Assembly: GCA_977020255.1 (NCBI GenBank)
Contig: CDROCS010000506.1
Span: 558,001-622,000 of the forward strand
Direction of reading: 5' to 3'
Origin: Obrimoposthia wandeli
Taxonomy: Eukaryota
Length of the DNA stretch: 64,000 bases
A program made the position numbers and the translations under genes. The notes under the pieces were generated by a model. That model worked only from the letters and a program-made list of their open reading frames with translations. It searched no databases and was not told the origin of the DNA. Positions 8,774 through 63,027 of this stretch are shown piece after piece; within the stretch, counting starts at the first letter, position 1, and each line of letters opens with the position of its first letter.

Positions 8774-8832
8774 TTAATTCTTCTCTGAATAAGACAACTC
8801 ATGTCATTTTGCGCGTTGTGAAGATAAAAAAA

Positions 8833-8866
8833 AAGCCCATTTATCAATAATCTGACAAATGGGCTT
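8833..8866 (-). terminator. Intrinsic terminator after fabB
   Basis: AAGCCCATTT/AAATGGGCTT stem followed by a long T run on the minus strand. Confidence 0.7.
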
Positions 8867-8922
8867 ATATTGTTCTCTTCACAGTAGAAAACGTATTACG
8901 TCTTCTTTAATGAATCGACATA

Positions 8923-13319: not shown

Positions 13320-13339
13320 AGATTTAGCTGAGGAGCCTA

Positions 13340-14353: not shown

Positions 14354-14395
14354 GTTTATTCCTCAGTTAATTGTCTAAATGGTTTAACTTATAAA

Positions 14396-15331
14396 TTAGT
14401 TAATCGTTAATCGTCTAATTTTGTCTGCAATAGCACGTTCAGATTGCTGCCATAGCGTTAAATAAGTCGTCTCTTTATCTTGCTGGAACATCACAATACA
14501 CCACAGCAGGGTCATCATCTCGACGACCACAGCCATCATATCTATCTGCCTAGCCGTGACTTGAACTGGGTCTTGCGCCGGGCCTTGTGCCGGGCCCTGT
14601 ACAGCACAGTAATATTGATTGTAATACTTTAAAAACAGCGCTTGCTGTTCGGTCTCCCACGCAAAAGTCTGAAACAAGGTCGCGATGTCAAAATCACCAT
14701 GCCCCGCGGCGGCAAACTCCCAGTCCAGCAAATATAACTTAGTCTGCGCATCTTCGATAAAATTCAATGGATTCATATCATGATGACAAAAAACGATTCT
14801 ATTGGCAGGTAAATGTTGTTGGATCAAGTTTATCACCAGCGCCAGCTGCTGTGCTAGCTGCGCAGTTTGAAATTCACTATCGAGAATTTGGTAATAATGC
14901 TGCAAGCGCTCGACCATATCCAGATGGTGATGAGGTAGAGGCTGTTGATGAAGCGTAGCGACTAATTGCGCTATTTTTTCTATATTGTCATCGTGGCATT
15001 GCGCGCTAGGATCCCAATGTTGACCTGCTATCCAATCACAGATCATGCCCTGCTCATGCTCGACAATTATCTTCGGCGCTAAACCGATACTGGCTGCCTG
15101 TGCTTGCGCTGCATATTCATGCTCAACATTGTTATCCATGTCGTTATAACTAGATGATAATTGCCGCACGAAATAACAATATTCAACATTATCACGCTGA
15201 AATTCAAGTCGATAATTATAATTGCTCAATCCACCGGGTACAGGAGTCAAAGAGAATAATTTAGGACTAAATTGCACCACAAAATCAGGCGCAATATCAA
15301 CACTGGTTAGCTGTTCCGGTTTCAGGATCAT
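14396..15331 (-). CDS. Choline/thiamine kinase-like phosphotransferase (occupies the thiK position)
   Basis: GGLSNYNY, CHHDMNPLN and LLDWEFA phosphotransferase motifs; same position as thiK in the enterobacterial hinT-ycfL-lpoB-thiK-nagZ operon. Confidence 0.75.
   Translation of the reverse strand: MILKPEQLTSVDIAPDFVVQFSPKLFSLTPVPGGLSNYNYRLEFQRDNVEYCYFVRQLSSSYNDMDNNVEHEYAAQAQAASIGLAPKIIVEHEQGMICDWIAGQHWDPSAQCHDDNIEKIAQLVATLHQQPLPHHHLDMVERLQHYYQILDSEFQTAQLAQQLALVINLIQQHLPANRIVFCHHDMNPLNFIEDAQTKLYLLDWEFAAAGHGDFDIATLFQTFAWETEQQALFLKYYNQYYCAVQGPAQGPAQDPVQVTARQIDMMAVVVEMMTLLWCIVMFQQDKETTYLTLWQQSERAIADKIRRLTIN
14561..14602 (-). repeat. In-frame 12-bp micro-repeat (VQGP-AQGP-AQDP-VQ) in the kinase gene
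   Basis: Three degenerate 12-bp units read directly from the sequence. Confidence 0.7.
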
Positions 15332-15864
15332 AACAAGATCACACGACTCACGTATGCTTCAACGGTATTGAAACGATTATTCATCAGTTCAATCGTTAGC
15401 ACATAACTATTCGGCGTATTCTCTGCGTTAACAATACTAATCAGCAATGAATAACGTCCCTCTAGCATTACCGCTTGTTGATCTTTTTCTACGACAGACA
15501 AAAGTTGATCTTGTTCTGTGGCGGACAAAATTGGCATATCGAACCAGCGAGATTGTGTCAGTGTTTCTGCACTTGCACGTTGTAACTCTTGATGCGTGAT
15601 TGGCAGAGAAACGACACTGCTGGGATAGCGAATATACAGACTTTGGCCATGTTCAAAATCACCTTGCACAAAGAAAGGTTGCTGCAACAGCAGTCCATTT
15701 AACTCGCGCACTTGAGTCGTTAATGGGTGCTCTTCAATCGTCTCAAGTGACATTTTCTGTGAGTCTGCCGGTGAGAGTTGTTGCGCGACTTGCTGCGAAG
15801 GCGCAGTACAAGCCGTAACCAACAATGCGCTAAGCAGATACGATAGTATGAGGATCCATTTCAT
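15328..15864 (-). CDS. Lipoprotein, possibly a divergent LpoB
   Basis: Lipobox LVTAC (Cys19); lies between hinT and the thiK-like gene, where lpoB sits in enterobacteria. Confidence 0.55.
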   Translation of the reverse strand: MKWILILSYLLSALLVTACTAPSQQVAQQLSPADSQKMSLETIEEHPLTTQVRELNGLLLQQPFFVQGDFEHGQSLYIRYPSSVVSLPITHQELQRASAETLTQSRWFDMPILSATEQDQLLSVVEKDQQAVMLEGRYSLLISIVNAENTPNSYVLTIELMNNRFNTVEAYVSRVILL

Positions 15865-15895
15865 TTATACTCTCCCAGCATGCTGTTGTTAAAAA

Positions 15896-16249
15896 CTATT
15901 TTACCGTAACCATAGCGCCAAGCTGTTCGCCGCCTACCAGATGCATGTGCAAATGATAAACTTCTTGGCCACCGTGTTTATTGCAATTCACAATAAGACG
16001 ATAGCCATTTTCAGCGATGCCTTCTTGTTCGGCTATTTTACGTGCCACGGTGAATAAACGCCCTAATGCAAGCTCATCGGCTTCGCATACATCATTGGTC
16101 GTCGGGATCAGTTTATTAGGGATAATCAATACATGTGTTGATGCTTTTGGACTAATATCACGAAATGCTGTCACTAACTCATCTTGGTAAAGAATATCAG
16201 CGGGGATGTCTTTATTAATGATCTTACGAAAAATCGTTTCTTCTGCCAT
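15896..16249 (-). CDS. hinT: Purine nucleoside phosphoramidase (HIT family)
   Basis: [11 protein letters not shown] start, HLHMH histidine triad. Confidence 0.95.
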
Positions 16250-16293
16250 TTTTTAGCTCCATTACAAAATTAAGTCTTTTGATAATAACAAAA

Positions 16294-16338
16294 AAGCCCG
16301 CTAGTCGCTACAATATGAGTGTAGTGGCTAGCGGGCTT
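16294..16338 (-). terminator. Intrinsic terminator between the QueD-like gene and hinT
   Basis: AAGCCCGCTAG/CTAGCGGGCTT outer stem with extended inner pairing; T run on the minus strand. Confidence 0.75.
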
Positions 16339-16381
16339 CTTATTTAACTAAAACAGTGAATAATGTCACTGTTAAGTGCAA

Positions 16382-17254
16382 TTAAGCAGAGGCAATAGCG
16401 CCTTTACCAACACCTTCATACGCAAATACCGTCAAAGTATCACTGCAATCTTTTGCTAATGTATCAGCAATATACTGGGCAATATTTTCAACTGTTGTTT
16501 CAGTCGGCATGATCTCGACAATTGACTTACCAATCGCCAGTTGGAATTCACCTTGTGGCGCCTGATATTTAAAACAGTAATGTTCCGGCGTTAATGCCGC
16601 CATCCCAGCGCGAGATAGTGATAACTCAGACGCTGATACCATATCGCACTGCTCTGCAAGGTAGATGTCTTTCCAACGCTCTGCCCAGCTCAGTTCAAGT
16701 GCGCTATCACGCTCATCGTTACGTAATATTTCTATCGTCGAGCGATGACCATGGGCGATACGCTGGCAATTACCTAAATGTTTACGTAAACCATGACTGT
16801 AGCAGTATTCTGCACCGTCAATTTTTTCTTCACGTAATTTAACATCAAGTTTTTTAACATTGTTTGGTAAGCGCAGCATTAACTGCTCAGTCAAATATGT
16901 TTCTAAACTAGCAAGAGTAATTTCCGCTGTTGGGATCAATGCAAATGCTTGGTCAGGACAAGCTAAATGAATTGATTCACTGTGCTCACGCCATACATCG
17001 ACATAAGTAAATGCACCATCGCTCATCACATCACAAAATTTAGCATGTGCAGGTACGATCAATTTATGATCGACTAATTCATCAACCGTCGACTTAATCA
17101 GTTTTTTCACAATCCCAAAATCAAGGATCATGCTTTGTTCATTTAAGTCACCATGCAGAACAATATCCACTAACCAACTTTGGCCAATAACGCCGCGTGA
17201 ATAATCTAATACTGAAGAATCAATAACAGTAAGATCTTTGACGAATAATTTCAT
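16382..17254 (-). CDS. 6-carboxytetrahydropterin synthase/PTPS-family protein with tandem T-fold domains
   Basis: N-terminal half has ILDFG...VDHK; C-terminal half has CQRIAHGH and PTETTVENIA; about twice the length of a single QueD. Confidence 0.75.
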   Translation of the reverse strand: MKLFVKDLTVIDSSVLDYSRGVIGQSWLVDIVLHGDLNEQSMILDFGIVKKLIKSTVDELVDHKLIVPAHAKFCDVMSDGAFTYVDVWREHSESIHLACPDQAFALIPTAEITLASLETYLTEQLMLRLPNNVKKLDVKLREEKIDGAEYCYSHGLRKHLGNCQRIAHGHRSTIEILRNDERDSALELSWAERWKDIYLAEQCDMVSASELSLSRAGMAALTPEHYCFKYQAPQGEFQLAIGKSIVEIMPTETTVENIAQYIADTLAKDCSDTLTVFAYEGVGKGAIASA

Positions 17255-17320
17255 CTAAATAATGTCCTTTATGGTAACTAAAATAGGTAGCGCTGTTTGA
17301 GTAATACTCATTGATCAATG

Positions 17321-17713
17321 CTATTTTTGTGCGTCGTATTCATCTTTAAATGAAGCGTTAAGTTCTTCACTATCAACCACAACTACATCTTGGCCTGCTT
17401 TTGGAAATACTGAGATAACAACGCCATCTGCAGCAAGACCTGGTAACCAATTGTTACGCCAAGCACCCATTTCAATTTTAAGCGGTTGGCACGCAGCCCA
17501 ATCGCCTTGGATCCACTCACTTGCAAACTCGGCATGTGGCCAAACTGGGATGCTTCTTTCGCCTTCAGTTTCGCTAATAACAAAACCGTTCTCGTCTGCT
17601 AATGTCCATATTTCTTCAGACTTAACTGCACGAAATATGAAATAGTTGAAACGTGCTTCAGGTGATTTCTCAACAGCGTCAGCAGTTTGCTTGTCATGGA
17701 TTTTAAATGTCAT
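17321..17713 (-). CDS. DUF2750-like hypothetical protein
   Basis: EEIWTL, IPVWPHAEFA, WLPGL motifs that I associate with DUF2750. Confidence 0.65.
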   Translation of the reverse strand: MTFKIHDKQTADAVEKSPEARFNYFIFRAVKSEEIWTLADENGFVISETEGERSIPVWPHAEFASEWIQGDWAACQPLKIEMGAWRNNWLPGLAADGVVISVFPKAGQDVVVVDSEELNASFKDEYDAQK

Positions 17714-17790
17714 AATTTTCTCTCAAGAAACCGCCGTTTGCAGTTTCAAATAATGTTTATAATAAAGCAGCCGAGGATTGTACGCTGCGT

Positions 17791-17840
17791 AATAATAAAT
17801 ACCAATAATAAATACTAATAATAAGAGTAAATAATAAAAG
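17791..17840. repeat. 13-bp-period AT-rich tandem repeat (about 4 units)
   Basis: AATAATAAATACC / AATAATAAATACT / AATAATAAGAGTA / AATAATAAAAG. Confidence 0.7.
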
Positions 17841-17868
17841 CCAGTATTACTATTTTCCAACAGCAAGT

Positions 17869-18810
17869 TTATTTTACAAATGACAACTTGCGTAAATAAC
17901 GCGGTAACATGGTTTCATTACCCTGCAATCCACCTTGGTGTATATAAAGAATGGGGCGATTATCGCTATTTTCAAGTCCTGCAGCGGTATTCTCATTCAT
18001 CATGGTAAATTCACGCTGCAAGCATAACCAAGCGAGCGGATCGTAAAGTAAATCAAATTCTATATTGGTGGTTTGTTTTAACTGCGTCCATATATGATAA
18101 AACGGCAGGTAAAGCTTACCAAAATGATACTTCTTATCAGTGCAAAGTACAGTCGGATGTGACGATTCATCAGCACACAAAGCGAAGAACTGTTGCTTTA
18201 AATAACTATTCCCACCCACACAGGCACATGCTTGCACTTCAAAAGGTAAGTTTTTCTGTAAAAATAACGCGGTTGTGCCAGTTCCTGCAGGCAACACTAC
18301 CCTAATATCGGCGTACGACTTTGCTTTGGCCCAAGCCATGATCTCATCAGCGAGTATTTTCAATCCCGTTTCAGCATACTGACATCGGCCACCTTCAGGA
18401 ATGAATACGGCGTGTTTGCCCTGCTCTACTAACGTCGGTAATACTTGCTGTTCAATATGTTCTATCACTGTCGATTCAGAATCAACAACAATAATGTGCG
18501 CGCCATACGCTAATGCAGCGCGGTAATTACCTTGGGGATTATCAATAAGATACTGCGGTAAGTGATCAACGTAATAATGCAGCTGGCATTGCTTTAACTG
18601 TGCTAATACGGCTAAAGAATACAAGGAATTAGCTTGAGCAGAACCGTGGCCAACCAGAATATCAACTTGGGATAAATCTTGTTGTAAGAAATGATAAAAT
18701 TTTCTAGCTTTGTTACCCGTAAAAGCCACATCTAATAAGTCATCACGCTTAACATACACTTGATGACCTAAGAATTCGATTTCATCGACAGGGGTATTGC
18801 GTAGTTGCAC
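17869..18810 (-). CDS. PLP-dependent ACC deaminase/D-cysteine desulfhydrase family protein
   Basis: VKRDDLL...GNKARK PLP-lysine motif, IPEGG, GTGTT, DLLYD. Confidence 0.85.
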   Translation of the reverse strand: MQLRNTPVDEIEFLGHQVYVKRDDLLDVAFTGNKARKFYHFLQQDLSQVDILVGHGSAQANSLYSLAVLAQLKQCQLHYYVDHLPQYLIDNPQGNYRAALAYGAHIIVVDSESTVIEHIEQQVLPTLVEQGKHAVFIPEGGRCQYAETGLKILADEIMAWAKAKSYADIRVVLPAGTGTTALFLQKNLPFEVQACACVGGNSYLKQQFFALCADESSHPTVLCTDKKYHFGKLYLPFYHIWTQLKQTTNIEFDLLYDPLAWLCLQREFTMMNENTAAGLENSDNRPILYIHQGGLQGNETMLPRYLRKLSFVK

Positions 18811-18836
18811 AGAGGAGTCCTCGTTTTATTACCTAA

Positions 18837-19637
18837 CTAAACTGACGTCGGCAGAGCCGCAGAGACAATGAATTGACGTCCGTTAACGGCCAATAATTCG
18901 GTATCAACATCATAGACTTGTTTAATGGTATCAACCGTTAACACTTGATTCGCACTGCCCTGACCAACAACACGCCCAGCCTTTAATAATAACACTTCCG
19001 ATGCATGGTTAAGGGCGAGGTTCAAATCATGAATAGAGGCGATAATGGTGATACCTTGCTGTGAAAATTCTTGGAGCATTTGTAATACTTCAATTTGGTG
19101 CTTTAAATCCAGACCTGTTAATGGTTCATCTAATAAGCACAGCACAGATTGTTTATTTAATATTGGCGATACTTGTACCAAGGTCCGCGCAATCAATACC
19201 CGCTGCCATTCACCACCTGATAGTTGGTCACAATTTCGCGTGACTAATTTCGCTATATCCAAACGCGATAACAGCTGGTTAATCACCAGACAGGCCTGCT
19301 CATCTTCCAAATTAATACCTAAAGGATGTAAGCCTAAAGCGATAAATTGATACACAGGGATAGCAAAAGGCGGCGGCGATGCTTGCGGTAACCAAGCGCG
19401 CTGAAGTGCAAGTTCTGCTATCGGATATTCAGCCACGTTGCGTTCAGCCAATTGATACTCGCCTTGGCAAGCTTGGGTATGACCTGCAAGCAATGATAAT
19501 AAAGTGCTTTTACCACTGCCGTTTGGGCCTAATAAAAACAGGCAACTACCAGCATCAACCGAGATGTTAATGTCATGTAAGCGTTGCTGATAATTAATCG
19601 CAGCTAACTTTATTATGTCAGATTGGTTCATCATCAA
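18837..19637 (-). CDS. btuD: Vitamin B12 ABC transporter ATP-binding protein
   Basis: GPNGSGKST Walker A, LSGGEWQRV signature typical of BtuD; follows btuC. Confidence 0.85.
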   Translation of the reverse strand: MMMNQSDIIKLAAINYQQRLHDINISVDAGSCLFLLGPNGSGKSTLLSLLAGHTQACQGEYQLAERNVAEYPIAELALQRAWLPQASPPPFAIPVYQFIALGLHPLGINLEDEQACLVINQLLSRLDIAKLVTRNCDQLSGGEWQRVLIARTLVQVSPILNKQSVLCLLDEPLTGLDLKHQIEVLQMLQEFSQQGITIIASIHDLNLALNHASEVLLLKAGRVVGQGSANQVLTVDTIKQVYDVDTELLAVNGRQFIVSAALPTSV

Positions 19638-51342: not shown

Positions 51343-54003
51343 ATTGATGTGAATTTCATCATTAGCGGAAAGTTACGTAACCACCATCACTTGATGTCGC
51401 CGTATATGATCTAACGGGACGTTCTGCGTGATGGTCACCGTAACCTTCACGTCTTGGCCTTGCTGCTCGCCAGATAGCGATACAGTCACTGCCACATCCC
51501 CGTTTAAAGTACCAACAAGATTGCCATCACTATCGACGCTAAAGCTCAGCGCTTCTCCGCCCGAGGTTAGCTCAGCTTCCAGCTCTGCGATTAACGTAGC
51601 TTGCAAAGTAGGGTCGATAACAATTGAATCAGGAACAAGACGATCTTCACCCGCTTGGATCACAAACGAGCCAGATTGTGATGCAGGGTAAGTGGTATCA
51701 GTACCACCCACACCGTTACCATCAACATCTAAATCGCCTTCAGCCAGTGTTAGCACACCGTCATCGCCACCCGCCGCATTACTGCCATCCGTAAGGGTAA
51801 TAGCCAATGTGCCGTCAGTGCTATCGCCATCGTTATCGGTGGCTGTCACACCCAAATTAATATTGGTCAATTCGCTGTCACTTTGATCAACTGGACCAGT
51901 GACAATTACTTGGTATGAACCATCCGTCGCGATAGTGACTGTCATCACCGCATCGCCCGCGCTGTCAAGCACGGTTAATATATTATCAACAACCGTAAAC
52001 GTCGTCGCTGCGCCGTTACTAGTGACCCCTGTTAATCCAGGTTGCGCTACTTGGAAGACAATGCTGTCAATCGCGTCTGAACCTACATCTAATGGGATCT
52101 GACCTGAAATTGTATTGCCTTTCTCGGTTGACTCATTAATTGTCACACCAGAATCAGTACCAAACGAAGGATTTTCACCATCTGTTATCGTGATATCTAC
52201 ATTCGCTGGCGCATCTAAATTATCACCGTCGGTATCGGTCGCTTGCACTGGCACATTGATGTGAATGTTCTCACCGTCAAAAGTTACGTAACCACCATCA
52301 CTTGAACCGTTATGGTCTAACGGCACATTCTGCGTGATGCTTACCGTAACCTTCACGTCTTGACCTTGCTGCTCGCCAGATAAAGACACCGTCACCGCAA
52401 CAACACCGTTTGGTAAAGTACCAACAAGATTGCCATCACTATCGACGCTAAAGCTCAGCGCTTCTCCGCCCGAGGTTAGCTCAGCTTCCAGCTCTGCGAT
52501 TAACGTAGCTTGCAAAGTAGGGTCGATAACAATTGAATCAGGAACAAGGCTATCTTCGCCCGCTTTAATAACGAACGAACCTGATTGTGATGCAGGGTAA
52601 GTGGTATCAGTACCACCAACACCGTTACCATCAACATCTAAATCGCCTTCAGCCAGTGTTAGCACACCGTCATCGCCACCCGCCGCATTACTGCCATCCG
52701 TAAGGGTAATATCCAATGTGCCGTCAGTGCTATCGCCATCGTTATCGGTGGCTGTCACACCCAAATCAATATTGGTCAATTCGCTGTCACTTTGATCAAC
52801 TGGACCAGTGACAATTACTTGGTATGAACCATCCGTCGCGATAGTGACTGTCATCACCGCATCGCCCGCGCTGTCAAGCACGGTTAATATATTATCAACA
52901 ACCGTAAACGTCGTCGCTGCGCCGTTACTGGTGATCCCTGTTAATCCAGGTTGCGCTGTTTGGAAGACAATGCTGTCAATCGCGTCTGAGCCCACATTTA
53001 ATGGGATCTGACCTGAAATTGTATTGCCTTTCTCGGTTGACTCATTAATTGTCACACCAGAATCAGTACCAAACGAAGGATTTTCACCATCTGTTATCGT
53101 GATATCTACATTCGCTGGCGCATCTAAATTATCACCGTCGGTATCGGTCGCTTGCACTGGCACATTGATGTGAATTTCATCATTAGCGGACGTTATATAG
53201 CCACTGATGTCGCCAGTATTAGTATGATCTAACGGCACATTCTGCGTGATGGTCACCGTGACTTTCACATCTTGACCTTGCTGCTCGCCAGATAAAGACA
53301 CCGTCACCGCAACAACACCGCTTGGTAAAGTACCAACAAGATTGCCGTCACTATCGACGCTAAAGCTCAGCGCTTCTCCGCCCGAGGTTAGTTCAGCTTC
53401 CAGCTCTGCGATTAACGCAGCTTGCAAAGTAGGGTCGATAACAATTGAATCAGGAACAAGACGATCTTCACCCGCTTGGATCACAAACGAGCCAGATTGT
53501 GATGCAGGGTAAGTGGTATCAGTACCACCCACACCGTTACCATCAACATCTAAATCACCTTCAGCCAGTGTTAGCACACCGTCATCGCCACCCGCCGCAT
53601 TACTGCCATCCGTAAGGGTAATAGCCAATGTGCCGTCAGTGCTATCGCCATCGTTATCGGTGGCTGTCACACCCAAATTAATATTGGTCAATTCGCTGTC
53701 ACTTTGATCAACTGGACCAGTGACAATCACTTCGTATGAACCATCCGTCGCGATAGTGACTGTCATCACCGCATCGCCCGCGCTGTCGAGCACGGTTAAT
53801 ACATTATCAACAACCGTAAACGTCGTCGCTGCGCCGTTACTAGTGATCCCCGTTAATCCAGGTTGCGCTGCTTGGAAGACAATACTGTCAATCGCGTCTG
53901 AACCTACATCTAATGGGATCTGACCAGAAATCACGTCGCCTTTATCATCGGCTTCATTAATAGTCACCCCCAAATCACTACCGAAGGACGGATCAGCACC
54001 ATC
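42200..54003 (-). repeat. 13 near-identical tandem units of 903-912 bp (about 303 aa, two T1SS-143-like domains each)
   Basis: Equivalent positions recur at 42620, 43523, 44426, 45335, 46244, 47150, 48059, 48968, 49877, 50780, 51692, 52601 and 53513. Confidence 0.95.
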
Positions 54004-55008
54004 AGCAATTTCAATGTCAATACTAATAGGGTTATTTAGCTCATTATTACTAGCATCAGAACCTTGAATTGACACATTAATATTTATTTTATCATCAATA
54101 TTGGTGACTAAACCTGAGCTATTTGTACCATCACCATGATCAATAGGTTGGTGTAATGTCGTCGTGATATTCACAGTAACATCTGGGCCATTGCTACTGG
54201 TATCTAAATCAATAGTCAATATCAGTTCACCGTTAAGCGTTCCAATAATAGAATTTGTTACTGAATCAAAGACAAACTCAATAGACTCACCACCTGATGT
54301 GATATCACTATTAAGTTCGCTAAGTAAGCTATCAAGAGTAAGAGGGTCGAACGTAAATGAATCAGGATTGAGTGGCTGTGTTCCTGCTTCAACAGTGACA
54401 GATTGAGTGGTTACAATTGGATAAGTACTTGATTGAAAATCATCATTTAAATCACCTTCCACCAAAGAAATAGACGCTACATTGCCCCCTTCAGCAGTAA
54501 GGTTAGCGAGACTTTCATCTTCATTTCTCGTTTCTTGTTGAGCACTAACAGTATCAAACCCTGCTTGTGCAAGTATTTCATTGTTATCATAATCAATAAC
54601 AACAAACGAGCTATTTGATGAACCTAGCGCCTCATTACCTGCCGCTGTGTCTATCGTTTCTGTTGGATCATCACCAGCTAAAATTGCATCTTGAATTGCA
54701 GCTATATCATCCAATGAAAAGTTAGCATTACTTGCGCCCTCTGCACTAAACGATACGCTATCACTAAGCTCTGATATTTTTAGGCCATCTTCAGACATCA
54801 TGATACAGGTGGGGCAAGATTCATTCACAATAGTAGGAATGCCATTTTTCATCACAACAAATTTAGCGCCAGCATTTGCTACAAGCACTTCATCTGATTG
54901 CATCTGATAATCAGCTTCAATAGGGACAACCTTTTCCCCTGCTTTAATAATGAAGACATCCTTTGAAACCTGCATATCAACCACATTTATCGTATCGTTC
55001 TTAGCCAT
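51373..55008 (-). CDS. Giant LapA-like RTX adhesin, N-terminal 1211 aa (retention module plus first repeats), ending at an in-frame TAA
   Basis: DDIAAIQDAILAGDDPT...TAAG retention-module signature; same repeats and same frame as the downstream ORF. Confidence 0.88.
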   Translation of the reverse strand: MAKNDTINVVDMQVSKDVFIIKAGEKVVPIEADYQMQSDEVLVANAGAKFVVMKNGIPTIVNESCPTCIMMSEDGLKISELSDSVSFSAEGASNANFSLDDIAAIQDAILAGDDPTETIDTAAGNEALGSSNSSFVVIDYDNNEILAQAGFDTVSAQQETRNEDESLANLTAEGGNVASISLVEGDLNDDFQSSTYPIVTTQSVTVEAGTQPLNPDSFTFDPLTLDSLLSELNSDITSGGESIEFVFDSVTNSIIGTLNGELILTIDLDTSSNGPDVTVNITTTLHQPIDHGDGTNSSGLVTNIDDKININVSIQGSDASNNELNNPISIDIEIADGADPSFGSDLGVTINEADDKGDVISGQIPLDVGSDAIDSIVFQAAQPGLTGITSNGAATTFTVVDNVLTVLDSAGDAVMTVTIATDGSYEVIVTGPVDQSDSELTNINLGVTATDNDGDSTDGTLAITLTDGSNAAGGDDGVLTLAEGDLDVDGNGVGGTDTTYPASQSGSFVIQAGEDRLVPDSIVIDPTLQAALIAELEAELTSGGEALSFSVDSDGNLVGTLPSGVVAVTVSLSGEQQGQDVKVTVTITQNVPLDHTNTGDISGYITSANDEIHINVPVQATDTDGDNLDAPANVDITITDGENPSFGTDSGVTINESTEKGNTISGQIPLNVGSDAIDSIVFQTAQPGLTGITSNGAATTFTVVDNILTVLDSAGDAVMTVTIATDGSYQVIVTGPVDQSDSELTNIDLGVTATDNDGDSTDGTLDITLTDGSNAAGGDDGVLTLAEGDLDVDGNGVGGTDTTYPASQSGSFVIKAGEDSLVPDSIVIDPTLQATLIAELEAELTSGGEALSFSVDSDGNLVGTLPNGVVAVTVSLSGEQQGQDVKVTVSITQNVPLDHNGSSDGGYVTFDGENIHINVPVQATDTDGDNLDAPANVDITITDGENPSFGTDSGVTINESTEKGNTISGQIPLDVGSDAIDSIVFQVAQPGLTGVTSNGAATTFTVVDNILTVLDSAGDAVMTVTIATDGSYQVIVTGPVDQSDSELTNINLGVTATDNDGDSTDGTLAITLTDGSNAAGGDDGVLTLAEGDLDVDGNGVGGTDTTYPASQSGSFVIQAGEDRLVPDSIVIDPTLQATLIAELEAELTSGGEALSFSVDSDGNLVGTLNGDVAVTVSLSGEQQGQDVKVTVTITQNVPLDHIRRHQVMVVT

Positions 55009-55565: not shown

Positions 55566-56960
55566 ATGGCTAAAAAAAATAAAGTACTTTCAACGACTCA
55601 ATTAGATTTTGTTGATGATAAATCAGCTGCATTATTATTAAACACCCCACACAGTGCAAGAATCATGCTTTGGGTAATGGTTCTATTTTTTATCGTAGCA
55701 ATTGCTTGGGCGTCTGTTGCAGAGCTCGATAAAGTAACAGTGGGTACGGGCAAAGTAATTCCATCATCCCAGCTACAAATCGTGCAAAACCTCGAAGGTG
55801 GTATAGTTAAAGAAGTGTTAATAAAAGAAGGGCAACATGTCGAACAAAATCAAAAACTGTTATTAATTGATGACACCCTCTTTCGTTCTGATTTTCGTGA
55901 AAGGACACAAGGCTTAGCAGGCTCTCAAGCTGACTCGATACGATTAAATGCTTTACTAGGCAGCGTCACTATTCACAAAAAGAATGCGAATACTAACTGG
56001 CGAAAAAGTGTTGATATTAAAGATAACATGCTTAAATTCGATACTGATTTTGCAGATAAGCATCAGAAATTAGTTCGACGTCAAAAAAATGAATACAACG
56101 ATAAAATTTCAAATATTCAAAACCAGTTATCGGGAATGGCACAACAGATCAGCCAAAAAGAACGCGAATTAATCGAAACTAAATCACGTATGAACAACCT
56201 TCGACGCAGCTATAACATCGCGAGTGAAGAATACAACATTACCAAACCACTTGCAGACGAAGGTGTTGTACCAAAAATTGAATTACTCAAACTGCAACGA
56301 CAATTAAACGATACCAATCGTGAATTAACCTCTGCAGAGCTTCAGATACCAGTAACACAAGCAACCATTCAAGAAGTCATTTTCAAATACATTAATATTG
56401 CATCTAATTTTCGCTCTGAAGCACAAGCGGAATTGAATGAAACGAGTGACCAACTCACCAGTTTATTAGAATCGCAGGTCGGTCTTGAAGATCGCGTAAA
56501 TCGAACTGTCGTTTTATCTCCTGTAAAAGGCACAATTCAAAAAATTTATGTTAATACGGTGGGCGGTGTTATTCAACCGGGTATGGACTTAGTTGAAATT
56601 GTTCCAACAGAAGATGCTTTAATGGTTGAGGCAAAAATTGCGCCTCAAGATATTGGTTTTTTACGCCCTGATTTACCTGTAATAATCAAATTTAGTGCTT
56701 ATGATTTTACAGTCTACGGTGGGCTGTCTGGTTACTTAGAAACAATCAGCGCCGACACAATTCAGGATGAAGAAGGAAATAGTTATTACCAAGTACGTAT
56801 AAGGACTGAAGATAACACTCTTAAAGGACCAGATGGTGAACCCTTACCTATCATCCCTGGTATGACAGCATCGGCAGACATCATAACAGGCAAACGTTCT
56901 GTTTTAGATTACCTGCTTAAACCCGTTCTTAAAGTTCGTCAAACGGCATTAAGAGAGTAA
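55566..56960 (+). CDS. lapC: T1SS membrane fusion protein (HlyD family, LapC-like)
   Basis: N-terminal TM, GKVIPSSQLQIVQNLEGGIV, SPVKG, PGM..VEIVP, PGMTASADIITGKRSVLDYLLKP. Confidence 0.9.
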   Translation: MAKKNKVLSTTQLDFVDDKSAALLLNTPHSARIMLWVMVLFFIVAIAWASVAELDKVTVGTGKVIPSSQLQIVQNLEGGIVKEVLIKEGQHVEQNQKLLLIDDTLFRSDFRERTQGLAGSQADSIRLNALLGSVTIHKKNANTNWRKSVDIKDNMLKFDTDFADKHQKLVRRQKNEYNDKISNIQNQLSGMAQQISQKERELIETKSRMNNLRRSYNIASEEYNITKPLADEGVVPKIELLKLQRQLNDTNRELTSAELQIPVTQATIQEVIFKYINIASNFRSEAQAELNETSDQLTSLLESQVGLEDRVNRTVVLSPVKGTIQKIYVNTVGGVIQPGMDLVEIVPTEDALMVEAKIAPQDIGFLRPDLPVIIKFSAYDFTVYGGLSGYLETISADTIQDEEGNSYYQVRIRTEDNTLKGPDGEPLPIIPGMTASADIITGKRSVLDYLLKPVLKVRQTALRE

Positions 56961-56965
56961 TTATA

Positions 56966-58279
56966 ATGATAATAAAAAACCGTATTAAAAAAATAGCACT
57001 ACTTATTAGCCTTCAATCCGTGGCTATACCAGTGATGGCGCAATCATTAGAGCAAGCGATAGCGCAAACATTAAGATCAAATCCTGAAATCAAAAGTACA
57101 TATAATGAATTTATGAGCCGTAACGAACTCATTAATGCTTCAACAGGTGACTATCTACCTTCTGTCGATCTAGAAGCCGGAATTGGTTATGAAGACTACG
57201 ATAATGAAACTGGCTCCAAAGGGGATTATGATCCTCGTAATGTAAAAATATCGTTTAAGCAATTATTATGGGATGGTTCGATTTCCTATAACGATATTCA
57301 GCGTAATAAAGCTGAAGCAGAAGCTCAACGTTACCAATTACTGTCTGATGCACAAGACATAGCATTAACAGCTACTGAAAGTTACCTCGATGTGTTACGC
57401 GCCCAAAACATATTAACTCTGTCTCAAACCAACTTTGCCGTTCACCAACGTATGTATTCTGATATAAAAAAACGAGCAGATGCTGGTATCGGATCTAGCG
57501 CTGATCTTGCCCAAATCGAAGGGCGTTTAGCGCGTTCTAATAGCAATTTAATCTCAGCACAAAATAACCTTATCGATAAAAACACGTCATTTTTCCATAC
57601 AATTGGCGCATTTCCTGAAGCATTAGAGAAACCAGAGGTCGATATCAATTTCCTCGCCAAATCACTCGATGATGCAATGGAAAAAGCACGAAATAATAAC
57701 CCTGTTACCTATGTTGCCTCTAATGATATCGAAGCTGCTCTACAACAATACGAACAAGCCAAAGGCACATTTTACCCATCATTTAGCATCGAAGCATCTC
57801 AAGAATGGGGAGACGAGCTCAATGGCTCACCAGGTTATACTGATGAGTTTTCAGCCATGTTAAAAATGCGTTATAACCTCTATAACGGCGGGTCTGATAA
57901 GGCAAAAAGTCGTCGCGCGGCATACCAAATAAATAAATCCAAAGATATTCGAGACAGTGCCTACCGTATGCTAGAAGAGGGTACGCGTTTAGCATGGAGT
58001 GCTATGGAACTAACATCCGAACAATCCAAATTTTTGCAACAACATGTAGATGCTTCAGCTAAAACCGTCGTCGCTTATGAAAAACAATTTAGGATTGGGA
58101 AGCGAACACTATTGGACTTATTGAATACAGAGAATGAACTATTTGAATCACGCAAAGCCTATTTAAATGCCCATTACAGCGGTATTTTGGCCAAATATCG
58201 AGTATTAAATGCAACAGGTTTATTGCTCGATTCCATGCGTGTCGATGTACCAAAGAGTTGGGCTAGCACTGTCAAATAG
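56966..58279 (+). CDS. lapE: T1SS outer membrane protein (TolC family, LapE/AggA-like)
   Basis: Signal peptide, QSLEQAIAQTL.SNPEI, QFRIGKRTLLDLLNTENELF. Confidence 0.9.
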   Translation: MIIKNRIKKIALLISLQSVAIPVMAQSLEQAIAQTLRSNPEIKSTYNEFMSRNELINASTGDYLPSVDLEAGIGYEDYDNETGSKGDYDPRNVKISFKQLLWDGSISYNDIQRNKAEAEAQRYQLLSDAQDIALTATESYLDVLRAQNILTLSQTNFAVHQRMYSDIKKRADAGIGSSADLAQIEGRLARSNSNLISAQNNLIDKNTSFFHTIGAFPEALEKPEVDINFLAKSLDDAMEKARNNNPVTYVASNDIEAALQQYEQAKGTFYPSFSIEASQEWGDELNGSPGYTDEFSAMLKMRYNLYNGGSDKAKSRRAAYQINKSKDIRDSAYRMLEEGTRLAWSAMELTSEQSKFLQQHVDASAKTVVAYEKQFRIGKRTLLDLLNTENELFESRKAYLNAHYSGILAKYRVLNATGLLLDSMRVDVPKSWASTVK

Positions 58280-58296: not shown

Positions 58297-58887
58297 ATGA
58301 AACGAACTTTAACTGGTTTATTAGCACTCAGCTTATTTGGCTGTTCTGTCACAGTGGAAGATCCACCTATTGCAGAGCAATCACAAGATCAACGAGACTT
58401 TGATAACGATGGTGTCATCAATATTCGAGATCTATGTGCTGAAACCCCTCATTCAGCCGTCGTAGATAACGATGGTTGCCCAACAAGCATAAAGCATAAC
58501 GAAGAAAATAATGTACGGGTTCTTTTTGCAAATGATTCAGCTGAAATACCTGAAACCTCCCTAGCAGAAATTCAACGCATGGCTGATTTTCTAGATGCCT
58601 ACCCAGAAACCTATATTGAATTAAAAGGTTATGCTAGCCCTGTTGGTAGAGCAGAATACAATATTGCTCTATCAAAACGACGAGCAACAAAAGTGCAGGA
58701 ACAGCTCATTGCCGAAGGTGTTGACCCTCAGAGAATAAAAGCAATCGGCTTCGGTGATATAGAACCCATAGAAGCAGAATCAAGAGACGCGACTAACACA
58801 CTAAGCCGTCGTGTTGTTGCCCGTGTTATCGGTTCAAAAGGGACCCTTGTTGAGGAATGGACTATTTTCACGTTCAGAGATCGTTGA
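58297..58887 (+). CDS. OmpA-family lipoprotein with an N-terminal Ca-binding (TSP3-like) loop
   Basis: Lipobox LFGC, DFDNDGVINIRDLC...DNDGCP, OmpA motifs YNIALSKRRA and LSRRV. Confidence 0.88.
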   Translation: MKRTLTGLLALSLFGCSVTVEDPPIAEQSQDQRDFDNDGVINIRDLCAETPHSAVVDNDGCPTSIKHNEENNVRVLFANDSAEIPETSLAEIQRMADFLDAYPETYIELKGYASPVGRAEYNIALSKRRATKVQEQLIAEGVDPQRIKAIGFGDIEPIEAESRDATNTLSRRVVARVIGSKGTLVEEWTIFTFRDR

Positions 58888-58969
58888 TTTTATCTCTAAT
58901 AATTGACTCTATATGAATGAATGAAATCAAAATAAATAAACCTAAAACTAACTTTGATGAGTGAGTATA

Positions 58970-60913
58970 ATGACACTTTATAGACAACTACTGATATGGA
59001 TACTGGTTGTATTTTTTGCTATTATCACCTCAGTATTTGCGATTCAATTCAACACTACACGTGATGTTATACGCGAACAGCAATCGACTGAAATTGATAA
59101 TACAATCAGAAATATAAATCTGGCATTAACCCCCTATTTACAAGTCAATGATACTGTATCAGCAAAGTCAATGTTCAACGCTAGCTTCGACGGCAACCGT
59201 TATAGCAAGGTACATCTCAGTATATTAGATTATAATGATGAGCTTGTTCTTAGCTATCCCACACAAGTAACAAATGTACCGAGTTGGTTTCAAAGTGTCA
59301 TCACTATCGATCCTATCATTCGAACTTCAGCCTTAACCAATGGTTTGATACCACTAGCAAACCTAACTGTAACCAGCAGTTCAATTTATGCTTACCAACA
59401 GCTTTGGCAAGCGAGTTTACAGCTTATATTCGGTTTTATTGTTACATTCTTATTAGGCTTATTATTACTCGCCTTTATTTTATCTAAAGTGCTTAAACCG
59501 CTAAAAGCGATTCAATACAGTGCTAGTAAAATGTCTGATAATCAATTTGGCCCTCCTTTAAAAATCCCCAACACTCGCGAATTAAGTGACGTGGTGATTG
59601 CATTGAACCATATGAGTGCACAACTCAAAGTTCATTTTGATCAACAAGCACAAGAAGCTGATAATTTACGTATTAGAGCATATCAAGATGCTGTATCGGG
59701 ACTCGCAAACCGTGGCTACTTAATGACACAAATTGAGGCGTGGTTAACATTACCTTCGACAGGCGGTATCGCCTTATTAAAAGTAGATTTAATTACAGAT
59801 GCCTATTCACAAGATGGGGATGAGGCTGGCGACCAGCTAGTACAAATATTATCATCTCGGATGAAAGAACTTATTAATGATGATTATACGCTCGCACGTA
59901 TTAACCAGTCCGAATTCATGTTGCTCGCGCCACGTATCACGGCGGAAGAACTAAAAACCATAGGCCGTTCATTACTGCTAATGACATCAGAACTGCAAAA
60001 CGACCCTCTTTATATTGCTCCAATTCCAGCAACCGTCGGTTTAGTCATGCGCAATCATGATGACACAATGATGACATTACTTGCACAAGCTGATAATGCG
60101 CTTATGCAAGCTAGACAGCAATTACAAGAACCTTTAACCTTATTTGATGTAAAAGAGCAAAGTCAGGCGACTAAAAAGATCACTAAAGGTAAGCAACAAT
60201 GGAAAGCATTAGTAGAGGAAGCTATTGCGAATAAATTGTTCAAATTCAACTTCCAAAGAGCCATTGACCATAACCAAAATACGCTTCATCAAGAAGTATT
60301 TGCTTATATTAAAAAAGATAACCAACTTTATTATGCCGCACAATTTTTAGGGGCAATAGAACAATCAAATACCAGTATGGATATGGATATGCACATCATC
60401 GATGAGCTATTTAATATGCTAAAAAATGATACCACTATCGATAATATTGCAATTAATATTACAAAAAAAAGTGTCAATGACACAGGTTTCATTCGTTGGT
60501 TAGCCAATAAAATGCAATCTAACCCACAATTGAAAGAGCGTATTATATTTGAGATTCCTGAAATTTGTTTTATCAAACATAGTAACAATGTAGGGTTATT
60601 ATGTGACATAATTCATCAAAATAACTTTGCTTTTGGTATCGATAATTTTGGACATAATTTCAGTTCGATTGGCTACCTAAATCAGTTTCGTCCAGCGTAT
60701 GTAAAACTGGATTTTGCATATACTCATCAACTTGAACATCAAGTCAAAGCTGATGTGCTTGCATCAATTACCCGAACAGCGAATAACCTATTAATTACTA
60801 CCATTGCGACTCGTGTTGAAGCAATTAGCCAACAAGAAAAATTGGCAAAGCTTATGGTAAGGGGTTTTCAAGGTTATGTGGTAGATAAAATAAATAGTGA
60901 ACAAAATATATGA
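58970..60913 (+). CDS. lapD: LapD-family c-di-GMP receptor (periplasmic, HAMP, degenerate GGDEF, degenerate EAL)
   Basis: MTLYRQL start, PSWF periplasmic motif, YAYQQLW before TM2, GGDEF replaced by NQSEF, EAL replaced by HQEVF; lies inside a T1SS operon. The ORF track starts at an upstream GTG at 58961. Confidence 0.85.
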   Translation: MTLYRQLLIWILVVFFAIITSVFAIQFNTTRDVIREQQSTEIDNTIRNINLALTPYLQVNDTVSAKSMFNASFDGNRYSKVHLSILDYNDELVLSYPTQVTNVPSWFQSVITIDPIIRTSALTNGLIPLANLTVTSSSIYAYQQLWQASLQLIFGFIVTFLLGLLLLAFILSKVLKPLKAIQYSASKMSDNQFGPPLKIPNTRELSDVVIALNHMSAQLKVHFDQQAQEADNLRIRAYQDAVSGLANRGYLMTQIEAWLTLPSTGGIALLKVDLITDAYSQDGDEAGDQLVQILSSRMKELINDDYTLARINQSEFMLLAPRITAEELKTIGRSLLLMTSELQNDPLYIAPIPATVGLVMRNHDDTMMTLLAQADNALMQARQQLQEPLTLFDVKEQSQATKKITKGKQQWKALVEEAIANKLFKFNFQRAIDHNQNTLHQEVFAYIKKDNQLYYAAQFLGAIEQSNTSMDMDMHIIDELFNMLKNDTTIDNIAINITKKSVNDTGFIRWLANKMQSNPQLKERIIFEIPEICFIKHSNNVGLLCDIIHQNNFAFGIDNFGHNFSSIGYLNQFRPAYVKLDFAYTHQLEHQVKADVLASITRTANNLLITTIATRVEAISQQEKLAKLMVRGFQGYVVDKINSEQNI

Positions 60914-63027
60914 AAGATCCACTACTCCAGTCTTTAGTTTATGTAAGTCGTTATTATGGTCAGGCGAACTCCCCGGAAGCTTTGGTTTCCAATCTTCCCC
61001 TTGCGGACGGTCTTCTTACACCATTTCTTTTGCCTCGAGCAGCCGAAAAGGCTGGCTTACAAGCCAAAGAGAGTAAAATGGCTCTCAATGATATCTCTCC
61101 GTTATTATTTCCTATCATCATACTCTTGAAAGGAGGTGATGCATGTGTTGTTCTCAGTATTGAACATGAAAAAGGTGAAGCAGAAGTGGTACTCGCACAA
61201 TCAGATGCGAGCCAACAATGGGTAAGTCTTGATGATCTAAACCAGCAATATACAGGACATTTATTTTTAATGAAAAAACGCTTTCGATATGATGAGCGTT
61301 CTCCTGAAATATTAAAAAATCGCGATGGTCACTGGTTTTGGAGTACAATATGGGAATCTCGTAACATCTACCGCGATGTATTCATTGTTTCGATTTTAAT
61401 CAATATATTTGCTATTTCGACCCCCCTCTTCACTCGTCTTGTTTACGATAAAATAGTGCCTAATCTGGCCTTTGATTCTTTATGGGTACTGGCTATTGGT
61501 ATCTCCATTATTTTTGGCTTTGATTTAATACTAAAAATTATGCGCAGTTATTTTATCGACCTAGCAGGGAAAAAATCAGACCTATTAATATCAGCTAAGA
61601 TTTTTAGTCGAGTGATGGGGATTCGAATGGAAGTTAAGCCGCCGTCAGTGGGTGCTTTTGCTCGTCACATGCAAGAGTTTGAATCTATTAGAGAATTTTT
61701 CACCTCTGCCACAGTCTCATCATTGATTGATTTACCATTCGCATTGATATTTCTTGTTATTATTTGGTTTGTTGCTGGCCCTTTAGCCTATGTCCCATTG
61801 ATTGCAGTCATTATTTTAGTGATTTATAGCTTATTTATACAACGACCTTTGCGCCGTAGTATTGAAGAAGGATCGCGTCTTTCATCACAAAAAAATGCCA
61901 ACCTAATTGAAAGCTTAAGTGGTTTAGAAACTGTAAAACTATTCGGAGCACAAAATCAATTCCAGTACCGTTGGGAAGAAGCTGTTGCCCACATGGCTAA
62001 TTGGGGACTCAAATCTCGCCGCATTACAGATTCAGTGCAAAATGTCGCGGGATTTTTACAACAATTTTCCTCTGTAGCTATGATCGTATTTGGTGTCTAC
62101 CTCATTGCAGATGGCCAATTAAGCATGGGGGGACTTATTGCTGCCACTATGTTAAGTGGACGAGCGATTGGCCCTTTAGTGCAGCTCTCGTTGTTATCAA
62201 CGCGCTACAACCAGGCAAAATCAGCCATGACTATCATCGAGCAACTTATGCAGATGCCAACAGAGCAAGAAGACGGTAAACGTTATATTCACCGCCCTGT
62301 AATCAAAGGTAAAATTGTTTTTAATAAAGTTAGTTTTACTTACCCTAATGCAACTAATGCCGCACTTAAAGACGTTAGTTTCACAATTAACCCTGGAGAA
62401 AAGGTCGCTATCATTGGCCGTATTGGTTCAGGAAAAACGACTATTGAACGTTTGATTATGGGGTTATATCAGCCCATAGAGGGATCTGTTCAAATTGATG
62501 ATACCGACATCAAGCAACTTCATCATATTGATGTTCGCCGAAATATTGGTTGCGTTCCCCAAGATATCACTTTGTTCTTTGGCTCGATTCGAGACAACAT
62601 TATTCTGGGTCGCCCATTAACAACAGATCAAGATATTTTACTTGCAGCTGAACGCTCAGGGGTGACAAACTTTACCCAACAAGATGCTGCAGGTTTAGAG
62701 AAGCAAGTCGCTGAAGGCGGTGCTGCTCTTTCTGGTGGGCAACGCCAAGCGATTGCCATTGCACGTGCCCTAGTTGGAAAACCTCCAGTACTGTTAATGG
62801 ATGAACCAACAAGCAGCATGGATAACCGTTCAGAAATGTATATTAAGCACCAACTAAAAGCCTTATCTAAAGACGAAACTCTTATTCTCATTACTCATAA
62901 AAACAGCATGTTAGATGTTGTTGATCGTTTAATTGTGATGGAAAAAGGGCAGATCATTGCTGATGGCCCTAAGAGTCAGGTACTTAAACAATTAAGTGAA
63001 GGCAGCGTTACACGGGCAACAACTTAA
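60910..63027 (+). CDS. lapB: T1SS ABC transporter/permease (LapB-like, C39-like N-terminus)
   Basis: VYDKIVPN, GRIGSGKTT Walker A, LSGGQRQ, LLMDEPTSSMD; ATGA overlap with lapD. Confidence 0.93.
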   Translation: MKDPLLQSLVYVSRYYGQANSPEALVSNLPLADGLLTPFLLPRAAEKAGLQAKESKMALNDISPLLFPIIILLKGGDACVVLSIEHEKGEAEVVLAQSDASQQWVSLDDLNQQYTGHLFLMKKRFRYDERSPEILKNRDGHWFWSTIWESRNIYRDVFIVSILINIFAISTPLFTRLVYDKIVPNLAFDSLWVLAIGISIIFGFDLILKIMRSYFIDLAGKKSDLLISAKIFSRVMGIRMEVKPPSVGAFARHMQEFESIREFFTSATVSSLIDLPFALIFLVIIWFVAGPLAYVPLIAVIILVIYSLFIQRPLRRSIEEGSRLSSQKNANLIESLSGLETVKLFGAQNQFQYRWEEAVAHMANWGLKSRRITDSVQNVAGFLQQFSSVAMIVFGVYLIADGQLSMGGLIAATMLSGRAIGPLVQLSLLSTRYNQAKSAMTIIEQLMQMPTEQEDGKRYIHRPVIKGKIVFNKVSFTYPNATNAALKDVSFTINPGEKVAIIGRIGSGKTTIERLIMGLYQPIEGSVQIDDTDIKQLHHIDVRRNIGCVPQDITLFFGSIRDNIILGRPLTTDQDILLAAERSGVTNFTQQDAAGLEKQVAEGGAALSGGQRQAIAIARALVGKPPVLLMDEPTSSMDNRSEMYIKHQLKALSKDETLILITHKNSMLDVVDRLIVMEKGQIIADGPKSQVLKQLSEGSVTRATT

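What the first reader, a model, noticed from the sequence alone, without database searches (positions are those of the whole stretch)
58888..60913. Lap-type c-di-GMP adhesion system with no lapG, and a LapD whose LapG-docking GWxQ loop reads GLIP
Seen: the operon is HlyD-TolC-OmpA-LapD-ABC with only about 80 bp between ompA and lapD, and no transglutaminase-like cysteine peptidase ORF occurs anywhere in the window. At 59342-59353 the LapD periplasmic loop reads GGT TTG ATA CCA (G-L126-I-P), in the context TSALTN-GLIP-LANLTVTSS. Established: Pseudomonas fluorescens LapD binds LapG through W125 of a GWxQ loop, and lapG is normally adjacent to lapD. Each codon here is one base from GWIQ (TGG to TTG, CAA to CCA). 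Inference: receptor and protease were uncoupled together. The adhesin may be constitutively anchored, or this intact-looking LapD may signal to a different periplasmic partner, such as the co-encoded OmpA lipoprotein or the TolC pore.
Basis: partly seen in the sequence, partly recalled or inferred. Interest (0 to 1): 0.78.

Follow-up and report, generated by a model that had tools for sequence, protein, structure and literature searches.

The report
LapD receptor orphaned by lapG deletion
A marine Moritella keeps a giant-adhesin secretion operon from which the release protease gene lapG has been deleted, leaving a 14-codon scar. Its c-di-GMP receptor LapD has lost the tryptophan that normally holds that protease yet stays intact, which suggests LapD has a second job.

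Summary
The operon reads adhesin / HlyD-TolC-OmpA-LapD-ABC, with 82 bp between ompA and lapD. The 64-kb window holds no LapG-like ORF. LapD Leu126 aligns with the LapG-docking Trp of P. fluorescens and Legionella LapD.

It is not a sequencing slip: M. marina, M. dasanensis and a metagenome contig also read GLIP. The spacer still holds the last 14 codons and the stop codon of lapG, so lapG was deleted in place.

On a LapD tree, seven lapG-less, Trp-less sequences form one clade whose loop has drifted to GLIP, GSTP, GSLK or a deletion. A second, independent lapG loss (loop GRVQ) shows the same pairing.

After the loss, LapD dN/dS rose from 0.04-0.08 to 0.16-0.27, and most in the periplasmic domain. 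The secretion genes did not change. The GGDEF-EAL half stays constrained and every ORF is intact.

The adhesin keeps its targeting helix, DP motif and TAAG site. A lapG elsewhere in the genome is therefore not excluded, and I could not test the whole genome. The idea of a new periplasmic partner (OmpA or TolC) finds no support.

Verdict: a degenerate variant of the known Lap system, and a useful natural experiment that hints at a LapG-independent role for LapD.

The parts
51373..55008 (-). Adhesin, N-terminal piece (1211 codons): retention module, targeting helix, DP motif and TAAG site. It ends at an in-frame TAA at 51373-51375.
   Evidence: The N-terminus matches the M. primoryensis adhesin region I structure 5ix9 (E = 2e-4). 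Pfam DUF5801.
54637..54648 (-). TAAG, the canonical LapG cleavage motif (codons 121-124). It is preceded by DDIAAIQDAILAGDDPTETID, which supplies the targeting helix and the DP motif.
   Evidence: Motif definitions come from bioRxiv 10.1101/198937 and PMC13090378.
30460..51342 (-). Adhesin, C-terminal piece (6960-aa ORF in the same frame as the N-terminal piece), with RTX repeats and a C-terminal secretion region.
   Evidence: HemolysinCabind in the last 1199 aa.
55566..56960 (+). HlyD/LapC-type membrane fusion protein.
   Evidence: Pfam HlyD_3. dN/dS 0.04-0.07.
56966..58279 (+). TolC/LapE-type outer-membrane factor.
   Evidence: Pfam OEP, 196 bits.
58297..58887 (+). OmpA-family lipoprotein (lipobox LFGC).
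   Evidence: Pfam OmpA. Translation.
58920..58964 (+). lapG scar: the last 14 codons (NEIKINKPKTNFDE) plus the TGA stop of the deleted lapG, 5 nt before the lapD ATG.
   Evidence: tblastn to four LapG proteins at residues 208-221. Side-by-side comparison with the LapG C-termini 'RIKLNRPKINFDE*' of L003, L005, L007 and L047.
58970..60913 (+). LapD homologue, 647 aa: LapD_MoxY_N periplasmic domain, HAMP, degenerate GGDEF and EAL.
59342..59353 (+). GLIP loop in place of the LapG-docking GWxQ motif.
60910..63027 (+). LapB-type ABC transporter with an N-terminal C39-like domain. Its start overlaps the lapD stop (ATGA).

Best explanation
This is a Lap-type giant-adhesin type I secretion operon that once read ompA-lapG-lapD-ABC. 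An internal deletion removed lapG in an ancestor of a Moritella-centred clade; only the last 14 codons and the stop codon survive here.

With its protease partner gone from the operon, LapD lost the Trp and Gln of the GWxQ docking loop (here GLIP). Its periplasmic output domain and HAMP relay have since evolved under relaxed constraint.

Shown: the deletion scar, the loop change, its phylogenetic pairing with lapG loss, and the LapD-specific rise in dN/dS.

Inferred: this LapD can no longer sequester LapG, so the operon has lost its own c-di-GMP-gated release switch. If no lapG acts from elsewhere, the adhesin stays plugged in its TolC pore once exported.

Also inferred: LapD is still kept as an intact protein whose GGDEF-EAL half remains under purifying selection. 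It therefore probably retains a cytoplasmic role, such as binding c-di-GMP or scaffolding cyclases and other partners, that does not need LapG.
For: 1. L126 aligns with the docking Trp of 3pjv and 4u64. The literature calls GWxQ strictly conserved and the Trp the main LapG anchor (PMC4359373).

2. The lapG scar lies at 58920-58964. L040 also keeps LapG signal-peptide codons joined to the same tail.

3. Gene contexts. WIN, M. marina (L001/L002), L040, L006, L036, L037 and L038 lack lapG and lack the Trp. Photobacterium, Psychromonas, Moritella-MAG and Photobacterium sp. SDRW27 relatives have ompA-lapG-lapD with GW[MLV]Q.

4. Tree. The Trp-less sequences form one clade (support 96/92), sister to lapG-bearing Psychromonas marina. 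L038 is an independent loss; the AU test rejects a single origin (p = 9e-62).

5. Selection. LapD dN/dS is 0.16-0.27 in lapG-less pairs and 0.04-0.08 in lapG-bearing pairs. The periplasmic domain reaches 0.17-0.44, while EAL stays at 0.11-0.22. HlyD, TolC and ABC stay at 0.03-0.10 in the same pairs.

6. Family-conserved positions changed: 2-7 of 19 in the periplasmic domain, against 0-4 of 65 in EAL. In the window sequence the only radical changes are W126L and Q128P.

7. All seven lapG-less LapD ORFs are full length despite dS of 0.7-1.2 between lineages.

8. LapD homologues have known cytoplasmic partners: cyclases and CheY3 (PMC11395469).
Against: Only 64 kb of the genome could be searched, so lapG may exist elsewhere.

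The adhesin keeps the targeting helix, DP motif and TAAG in all lapG-less loci. That fits continued cleavage by some LapG, although the whole segment is conserved and may be constrained for threading through TolC.

Leu is hydrophobic, and residual LapG binding was not tested.

The association rests on only two or three independent events, so the sign test cannot reach significance. Motilimonas LapD sits next to lapG yet has no Trp, so Trp loss does not always mean lapG loss.

dN/dS was computed with the pairwise Nei-Gojobori method, not with a branch model.
Confidence: 0.6

Rival explanations
1. lapG is encoded elsewhere in the same genome, alone or with a second, Trp-bearing LapD, and still cleaves this adhesin at TAAG. 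The LapD in this operon became redundant and LapG-blind, which is why its docking loop decayed.
For: The adhesin keeps its helix, DP motif and TAAG in every lapG-less locus.

V. cholerae LapG acts in trans on adhesins encoded elsewhere (PMC6890996).

Vibrio gangliei-type loci carry two LapDs and one lapG. The T1SS-embedded LapD1 has lost its Trp in some members.

Moritella-labelled MAGs have lapG-bearing Lap loci at other chromosomal sites.

The best run holding the window (X19) also holds an 80-85% relative of such a locus.
Against: In X19 and X1 the second locus sits on contigs at 13 and 19 depth, against about 34 and 122 for the window-type contig. Ratios that differ and are unequal point to another organism.

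No second Moritella marina or dasanensis LapD or LapG appeared among the named hits. No Moritella locus appeared in the genome-contig scan with a Moritella-MAG LapG. All three searches have limited sensitivity.
Confidence: 0.25
2. One reading: the intact LapD now signals through its periplasmic domain to a different partner, such as the OmpA lipoprotein or the TolC pore.
For: LapD remains intact and its stop overlaps the ABC start. Periplasmic-domain dN/dS is still below 1. Most fold-conserved positions are kept in the window sequence.
Against: The former docking loop differs in each sub-lineage (GLIP, GSTP, GSLK, 3-residue deletion), so no common new interface has been fixed there.

The periplasmic domain and HAMP are the fastest-evolving parts.

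OmpA and TolC dN/dS are the same in lapG-less and lapG-bearing clades, so there is no sign of co-adaptation.
Confidence: 0.07
3. Artefact: the GLIP codons or the missing lapG reflect sequencing or assembly error.
For: None beyond the fact that each codon is one base away from the consensus motif.
Against: The same GLIP loop and lapG-less spacer occur in M. marina, M. dasanensis-like and metagenome contigs from independent projects. Twenty public runs from 12 studies hold parts of this stretch.
Confidence: 0.02

Closest known systems
Pseudomonas fluorescens Lap system (LapA adhesin, LapEBC T1SS, LapD receptor, LapG protease)
   Same: LapD domain architecture. Adhesin with N-terminal retention module, targeting helix, DP motif and TAAG site, plus C-terminal RTX repeats. 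LapB-type ABC transporter, membrane fusion protein and TolC-like pore.
   Different: No lapG in the operon, only a scar. The GWxQ docking loop reads GLIP. An OmpA lipoprotein gene is present. lapD sits inside the T1SS operon and overlaps the ABC gene start.
Photobacterium profundum/frigidiphilum and Psychromonas marina ompA-lapG-lapD-ABC operons (L003, L005, L011-L013, L020)
   Same: Closest relatives: LapD 75-81% identical, same gene order, same adhesin N-terminus.
   Different: They keep the 221-aa LapG and the GW[MV]Q loop. Their LapD evolves at dN/dS 0.04-0.08.
Vibrio cholerae LapD/LapG with FrhA and CraA
   Same: The cytoplasmic module is the best solved-structure match (6pwj, E = 2e-94). 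The same EVF, DN(F/Y)G and KLD pattern occurs in the degenerate EAL domain.
   Different: V. cholerae has lapG adjacent to lapD and adhesins encoded elsewhere. Here the adhesin is adjacent and lapG is missing.
Desulfovibrio vulgaris DvhD/DvhG
   Same: A c-di-GMP receptor of a Lap-like system that lacks the docking tryptophan (PMC13090378).
   Different: DvhD has an unrelated dCache periplasmic domain, and its protease DvhG is present with an altered pocket. Here the LapD-type domain is retained and the protease gene is deleted.
Shewanella oneidensis BpfD
   Same: A LapD homologue in an ompA-containing Lap-type operon, with documented cytoplasmic partners (the cyclases PdgA and PdgB, and CheY3).
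   Different: The Bpf system keeps the protease BpfG.

Membership tests
Lap c-di-GMP adhesin-release system | Inner-membrane receptor with LapD_MoxY_N periplasmic domain, HAMP, degenerate GGDEF and EAL | tested here: met
   Pfam scores: EAL 1.4e-34, LapD_MoxY_N 1.1e-27, GGDEF 1.6e-13, HAMP 8e-6. Matches to solved structures 6pwj, 3pjw, 3pjv and 4u64.
Lap c-di-GMP adhesin-release system | GWxQ loop whose Trp docks LapG | tested here: not met
   The loop reads GLIP. The Leu aligns with W125/W126 of the solved structures and with Trp in 102 of 112 homologues.
Lap c-di-GMP adhesin-release system | LapG, a periplasmic calcium-dependent transglutaminase-like cysteine protease (PF06035), usually adjacent to lapD | tested here: not met
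   Absent from the operon and from the 64-kb window. A 14-codon scar remains. The rest of the genome could not be searched with these tools.
Lap c-di-GMP adhesin-release system | Giant adhesin with N-terminal retention module, [T/A/P]AA[G/V] site within residues 80-150, and C-terminal RTX repeats | tested here: met
   TAAG at residues 121-124, preceded by the helix and DP motif. Match to 5ix9. HemolysinCabind. Caveat: one in-frame stop at codon 1212 in this assembly.
Lap c-di-GMP adhesin-release system | Dedicated T1SS (LapB-type ABC transporter with C39-like domain, LapC fusion protein, LapE TolC-like pore) | tested here: met
   Pfam hits. Strong purifying selection, dN/dS 0.03-0.10.
Lap c-di-GMP adhesin-release system | c-di-GMP binding by the EAL domain that drives inside-out signalling | not testable with these tools
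   61 of 65 family-conserved EAL positions are kept. The cytoplasmic module matches V. cholerae LapD at 320 bits. Binding itself needs an assay.

The most novel reading that the evidence does not exclude
LapD has a LapG-independent function that selection maintains after lapG is lost. One example would be c-di-GMP-dependent control or scaffolding at the cytoplasmic face of the T1SS, since its gene is translationally coupled to the ABC transporter. The lapG-less Moritella clade would then be a natural system in which that second function can be isolated.
Probability: 0.3. Interest if true: 0.7.

Novelty: new variant of a known kind. Interest (0 to 1): 0.5.

Why it matters
LapD and LapG are treated as an inseparable signalling node, and the GWxQ Trp is described as strictly conserved. 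This clade is a natural knock-out. It shows that the docking loop and output domain are held in place only by LapG, because they drift once lapG is gone, twice independently. It also shows that the cytoplasmic half of LapD and the intact ORF persist. That makes a LapG-independent role of LapD directly testable. It also suggests that some cold-water Moritella may display their giant adhesin without the usual c-di-GMP-controlled release.

Tried and rejected
1. Whole-genome lapG search. The tools give no access to the rest of the chromosome.
- The scan's own notes hold no lapG or LapD entry for this genome. The one note that mentions LapG (s1-214962) describes LapG release sites on two adhesins on another piece. 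The sequence look-up was blank, which means nothing.
- The genome-contig scan with a Moritella-MAG LapG found 25 loci, none from Moritella. It depends on exact 8-residue words and missed most known LapG genomes, so it is weak evidence.

2. Second Lap locus in the same genome. I laid the contigs of four runs on L044, a lapG-linked Moritella-MAG type locus. Relatives are present in the same samples but at different depth from the window-type contig. All four runs are complex samples, so they are probably from another organism.

3. R450 of P. fluorescens LapD as a c-di-GMP marker. Rejected, because V. cholerae LapD also lacks it.

4. Statistical test of the Trp/lapG association. Only three independent contrasts exist, so the sign test has p of 0.25-0.5.

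5. The metagenome scan with LapD gave only seven loci.

6. Literature search for a LapD without LapG, and for Moritella Lap systems, found nothing.

Full report
**What is there.** The plus strand carries five tightly packed genes: HlyD-type fusion protein (55566-56960), TolC-type pore (56966-58279), OmpA-family lipoprotein (58297-58887, lipobox LFGC), a 647-aa LapD homologue (58970-60913) and an ABC transporter with a C39-like domain (60910-63027). The lapD stop overlaps the ABC start as ATGA.

Divergently transcribed is a giant adhesin gene (30460-55008, minus strand). Its N-terminus matches the retention-module structure 5ix9 of the Marinomonas primoryensis adhesin. It carries the motif series DDIAAIQDAILAG-DDP-TETID-TAAG at residues 98-124. 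These correspond to the targeting helix, the DP turn and the [T/A/P]AA[G/V] LapG site defined in bioRxiv 10.1101/198937 and PMC13090378. Its C-terminus has RTX repeats.

The organism is a Moritella. LapD is 91% identical to M. marina and 88% to M. dasanensis. The M. marina contig has the same neighbours, nadA and tol-pal.

Bases 59342-59353 encode G125-L126-I127-P128. HMMER alignments to the solved output domains put L126 on W125 of P. fluorescens LapD (3pjv) and on W126 of the Legionella homologue (4u64). The literature describes GWxQ as strictly conserved and the Trp as the main anchor inserted into a LapG pocket (PMC4359373).

No LapG-like ORF exists in the window by blastp, by tblastn, or by a purpose-built LapG HMM on six-frame ORFs. 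GLIP is not an error, because M. marina, M. dasanensis and metagenome contig L040 read the same.

**lapG was deleted in place.** The 82-bp ompA-lapD spacer ends with NEIKINKPKTNFDE-TGA at 58920-58964, 5 nt before the lapD ATG. Relatives' LapG proteins end ...RIKLNRPKINFDE-stop with the same 5-nt spacing. In L040 the remnant also keeps LapG signal-peptide codons (LLFVSAITLTDKESKQI) joined directly to that tail, so the deletion was internal to lapG. L038 likewise keeps N- and C-terminal fragments.

**Comparative pattern.** I looked up gene contexts of LapD homologues.
- Trp-less LapDs with the ompA-lapD order all lack lapG between ompA and lapD. These are the window, M. marina L001/L002, L040, L006 (GSTP), L036 (GSLK), L037 (three-residue deletion) and L038 (GRVQ).
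- Trp-bearing relatives all have ompA-lapG(221 aa)-lapD. These are the Photobacterium profundum group, Psychromonas marina, the Moritella MAG L007 and Photobacterium sp. SDRW27. A second Moritella MAG (L049) also has lapG directly before lapD, but there hlyD lies between ompA and lapG.

An ML tree places the first six groups, together with M. dasanensis P0002, in one clade (96/92 support), sister to lapG-bearing P. marina. L038 lies elsewhere, sister to the lapG-bearing SDRW27. An AU test rejects a single origin (p = 9e-62). So there are at least two independent lapG losses, each with loss of the Trp. Inside the larger clade the loop has since taken four different forms while its flanks (LANLTVTSS) stay conserved.

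A third Trp loss occurs in Vibrio gangliei-type loci (adhesin-HlyD-LapD1-ABC-TolC-OmpA-LapG-LapD2). There a second LapD sits next to lapG.

One exception cuts the other way: Motilimonas LapD is adjacent to lapG yet has a very divergent periplasmic domain with no Trp.

With only three independent contrasts the association cannot reach formal significance.

**Selection.** Pairwise Nei-Gojobori estimates:

| Gene or domain | lapG-less pairs | lapG-bearing pairs |
|---|---|---|
| LapD, whole | 0.16-0.27 | 0.04-0.08 |
| LapD periplasmic domain | 0.17-0.44 | 0.02-0.09 |
| LapD EAL domain | 0.11-0.22 | 0.03-0.07 |
| HlyD, TolC, ABC | 0.03-0.10 | 0.03-0.12 |
| OmpA | about 0.2 | about 0.2 |

In the lapG-less clade, periplasmic amino-acid divergence is 2 to 2.5 times that of EAL. 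In lapG-bearing pairs the two are equal.

Of positions at least 97% conserved in Trp-bearing LapDs, Trp-less sequences have changed 2-7 of 19 in the periplasmic domain but only 0-4 of 65 in EAL. In the window sequence the periplasmic changes are L34I, I69F, W126L and Q128P, so the only radical ones are in the docking loop.

All lapG-less LapD ORFs are full length despite dS of roughly 0.7-1.2 between lineages. Neutral decay would not allow that. The overlap with the ABC start could select against premature stops, but it would not hold dN/dS at 0.1-0.2 in the cytoplasmic domains.

**Interpretation.** The operon has lost its own protease. Its receptor has lost the means to hold one, and the output half of LapD is eroding while the c-di-GMP-binding half is kept. 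Known cytoplasmic partners of LapD homologues, such as diguanylate cyclases and CheY3 (PMC11395469), offer a plausible reason for retention. This is inference.

Whether the adhesin is permanently anchored depends on whether a lapG acts in trans. The retained helix-DP-TAAG segment in every lapG-less locus and the V. cholerae precedent of trans-acting LapG keep that rival alive.

I could not search the rest of the chromosome. Laying contigs of four runs on a lapG-linked Moritella-MAG-type locus (L044) showed relatives in the same samples. Their depth was 13 against about 34 (X19) and 19 against about 122 (X1) relative to the window-type contig. All these runs are complex samples, so the second locus probably belongs to another organism.

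The loop is not conserved within the clade. The periplasmic domain is the least constrained part. OmpA and TolC rates do not change.

**Comparison and novelty.** It works like, and descends from, the Lap system. It fails two defining features: the GWxQ Trp and an adjacent lapG. I found no paper describing a LapD retained without LapG, or any Lap system in Moritella. The nearest precedent for a Trp-less receptor is Desulfovibrio DvhD, which has a different periplasmic fold and keeps its protease.

I rate this a new variant of a known kind, of moderate interest. Its main value is as a natural experiment on what LapD does without LapG.

**Caveat on the adhesin.** In this assembly the adhesin frame carries one in-frame TAA at codon 1212 of 8183 (51373-51375), inside roughly 300-residue tandem repeats. 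The M. marina gene is called as one 8617-aa product. I did not verify this against reads.

Noticed in passing
window 51373-51375 (minus strand): A single in-frame TAA at codon 1212 of the 8183-codon adhesin frame splits it into a 1211-aa N-terminal piece and a 6960-aa ORF. It lies inside roughly 300-residue tandem repeats. The M. marina orthologue is called as one 8617-aa gene. It could be a real nonsense mutation or an assembly error in repeats.
   Followed up: partly
L048 (Vibrio gangliei AP021870.1) 8474-19032; L039 1906-12448: These loci carry two LapD genes and one lapG: adhesin-HlyD-LapD1-ABC-TolC-OmpA-LapG-LapD2. LapD1 reads NWQP in V. gangliei but NGQP or NGEP (no Trp) in L039 and P0063.
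   Followed up: partly
L021 9208-11154 and L022 10561-12501 (Motilimonas): A LapD-like protein directly after lapG has a very divergent periplasmic domain (LapD_MoxY_N only 18 bits) and no GWxQ Trp. It is a possible case of a different docking mode with the protease retained.
   Followed up: partly
window 55566-56960 compared with L003 5981-7375: The window's HlyD is 95% identical to the Photobacterium profundum-type HlyD (dS 0.60). TolC and LapD of the same pair are 82% and 79% identical (dS about 1.05). This suggests recombination or transfer within the operon between Moritella and Photobacterium.
   Followed up: no
L001, L007, L049: Three Moritella-labelled genomes carry Lap-type operons at three different chromosomal sites (nadA/tol-pal, birA-murB, clpB-bamD). 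The last two have lapG. This suggests mobile or multiple Lap loci in the genus.
   Followed up: no
L045 1975-3921 (metagenome contig JAAUYM010031741.1): A distant LapD (24% identity, strong LapD_MoxY_N hit) reads DGLVEW at the loop, with Leu at the Trp column. It has no lapG or T1SS gene in the 1.9 kb upstream.
   Followed up: no
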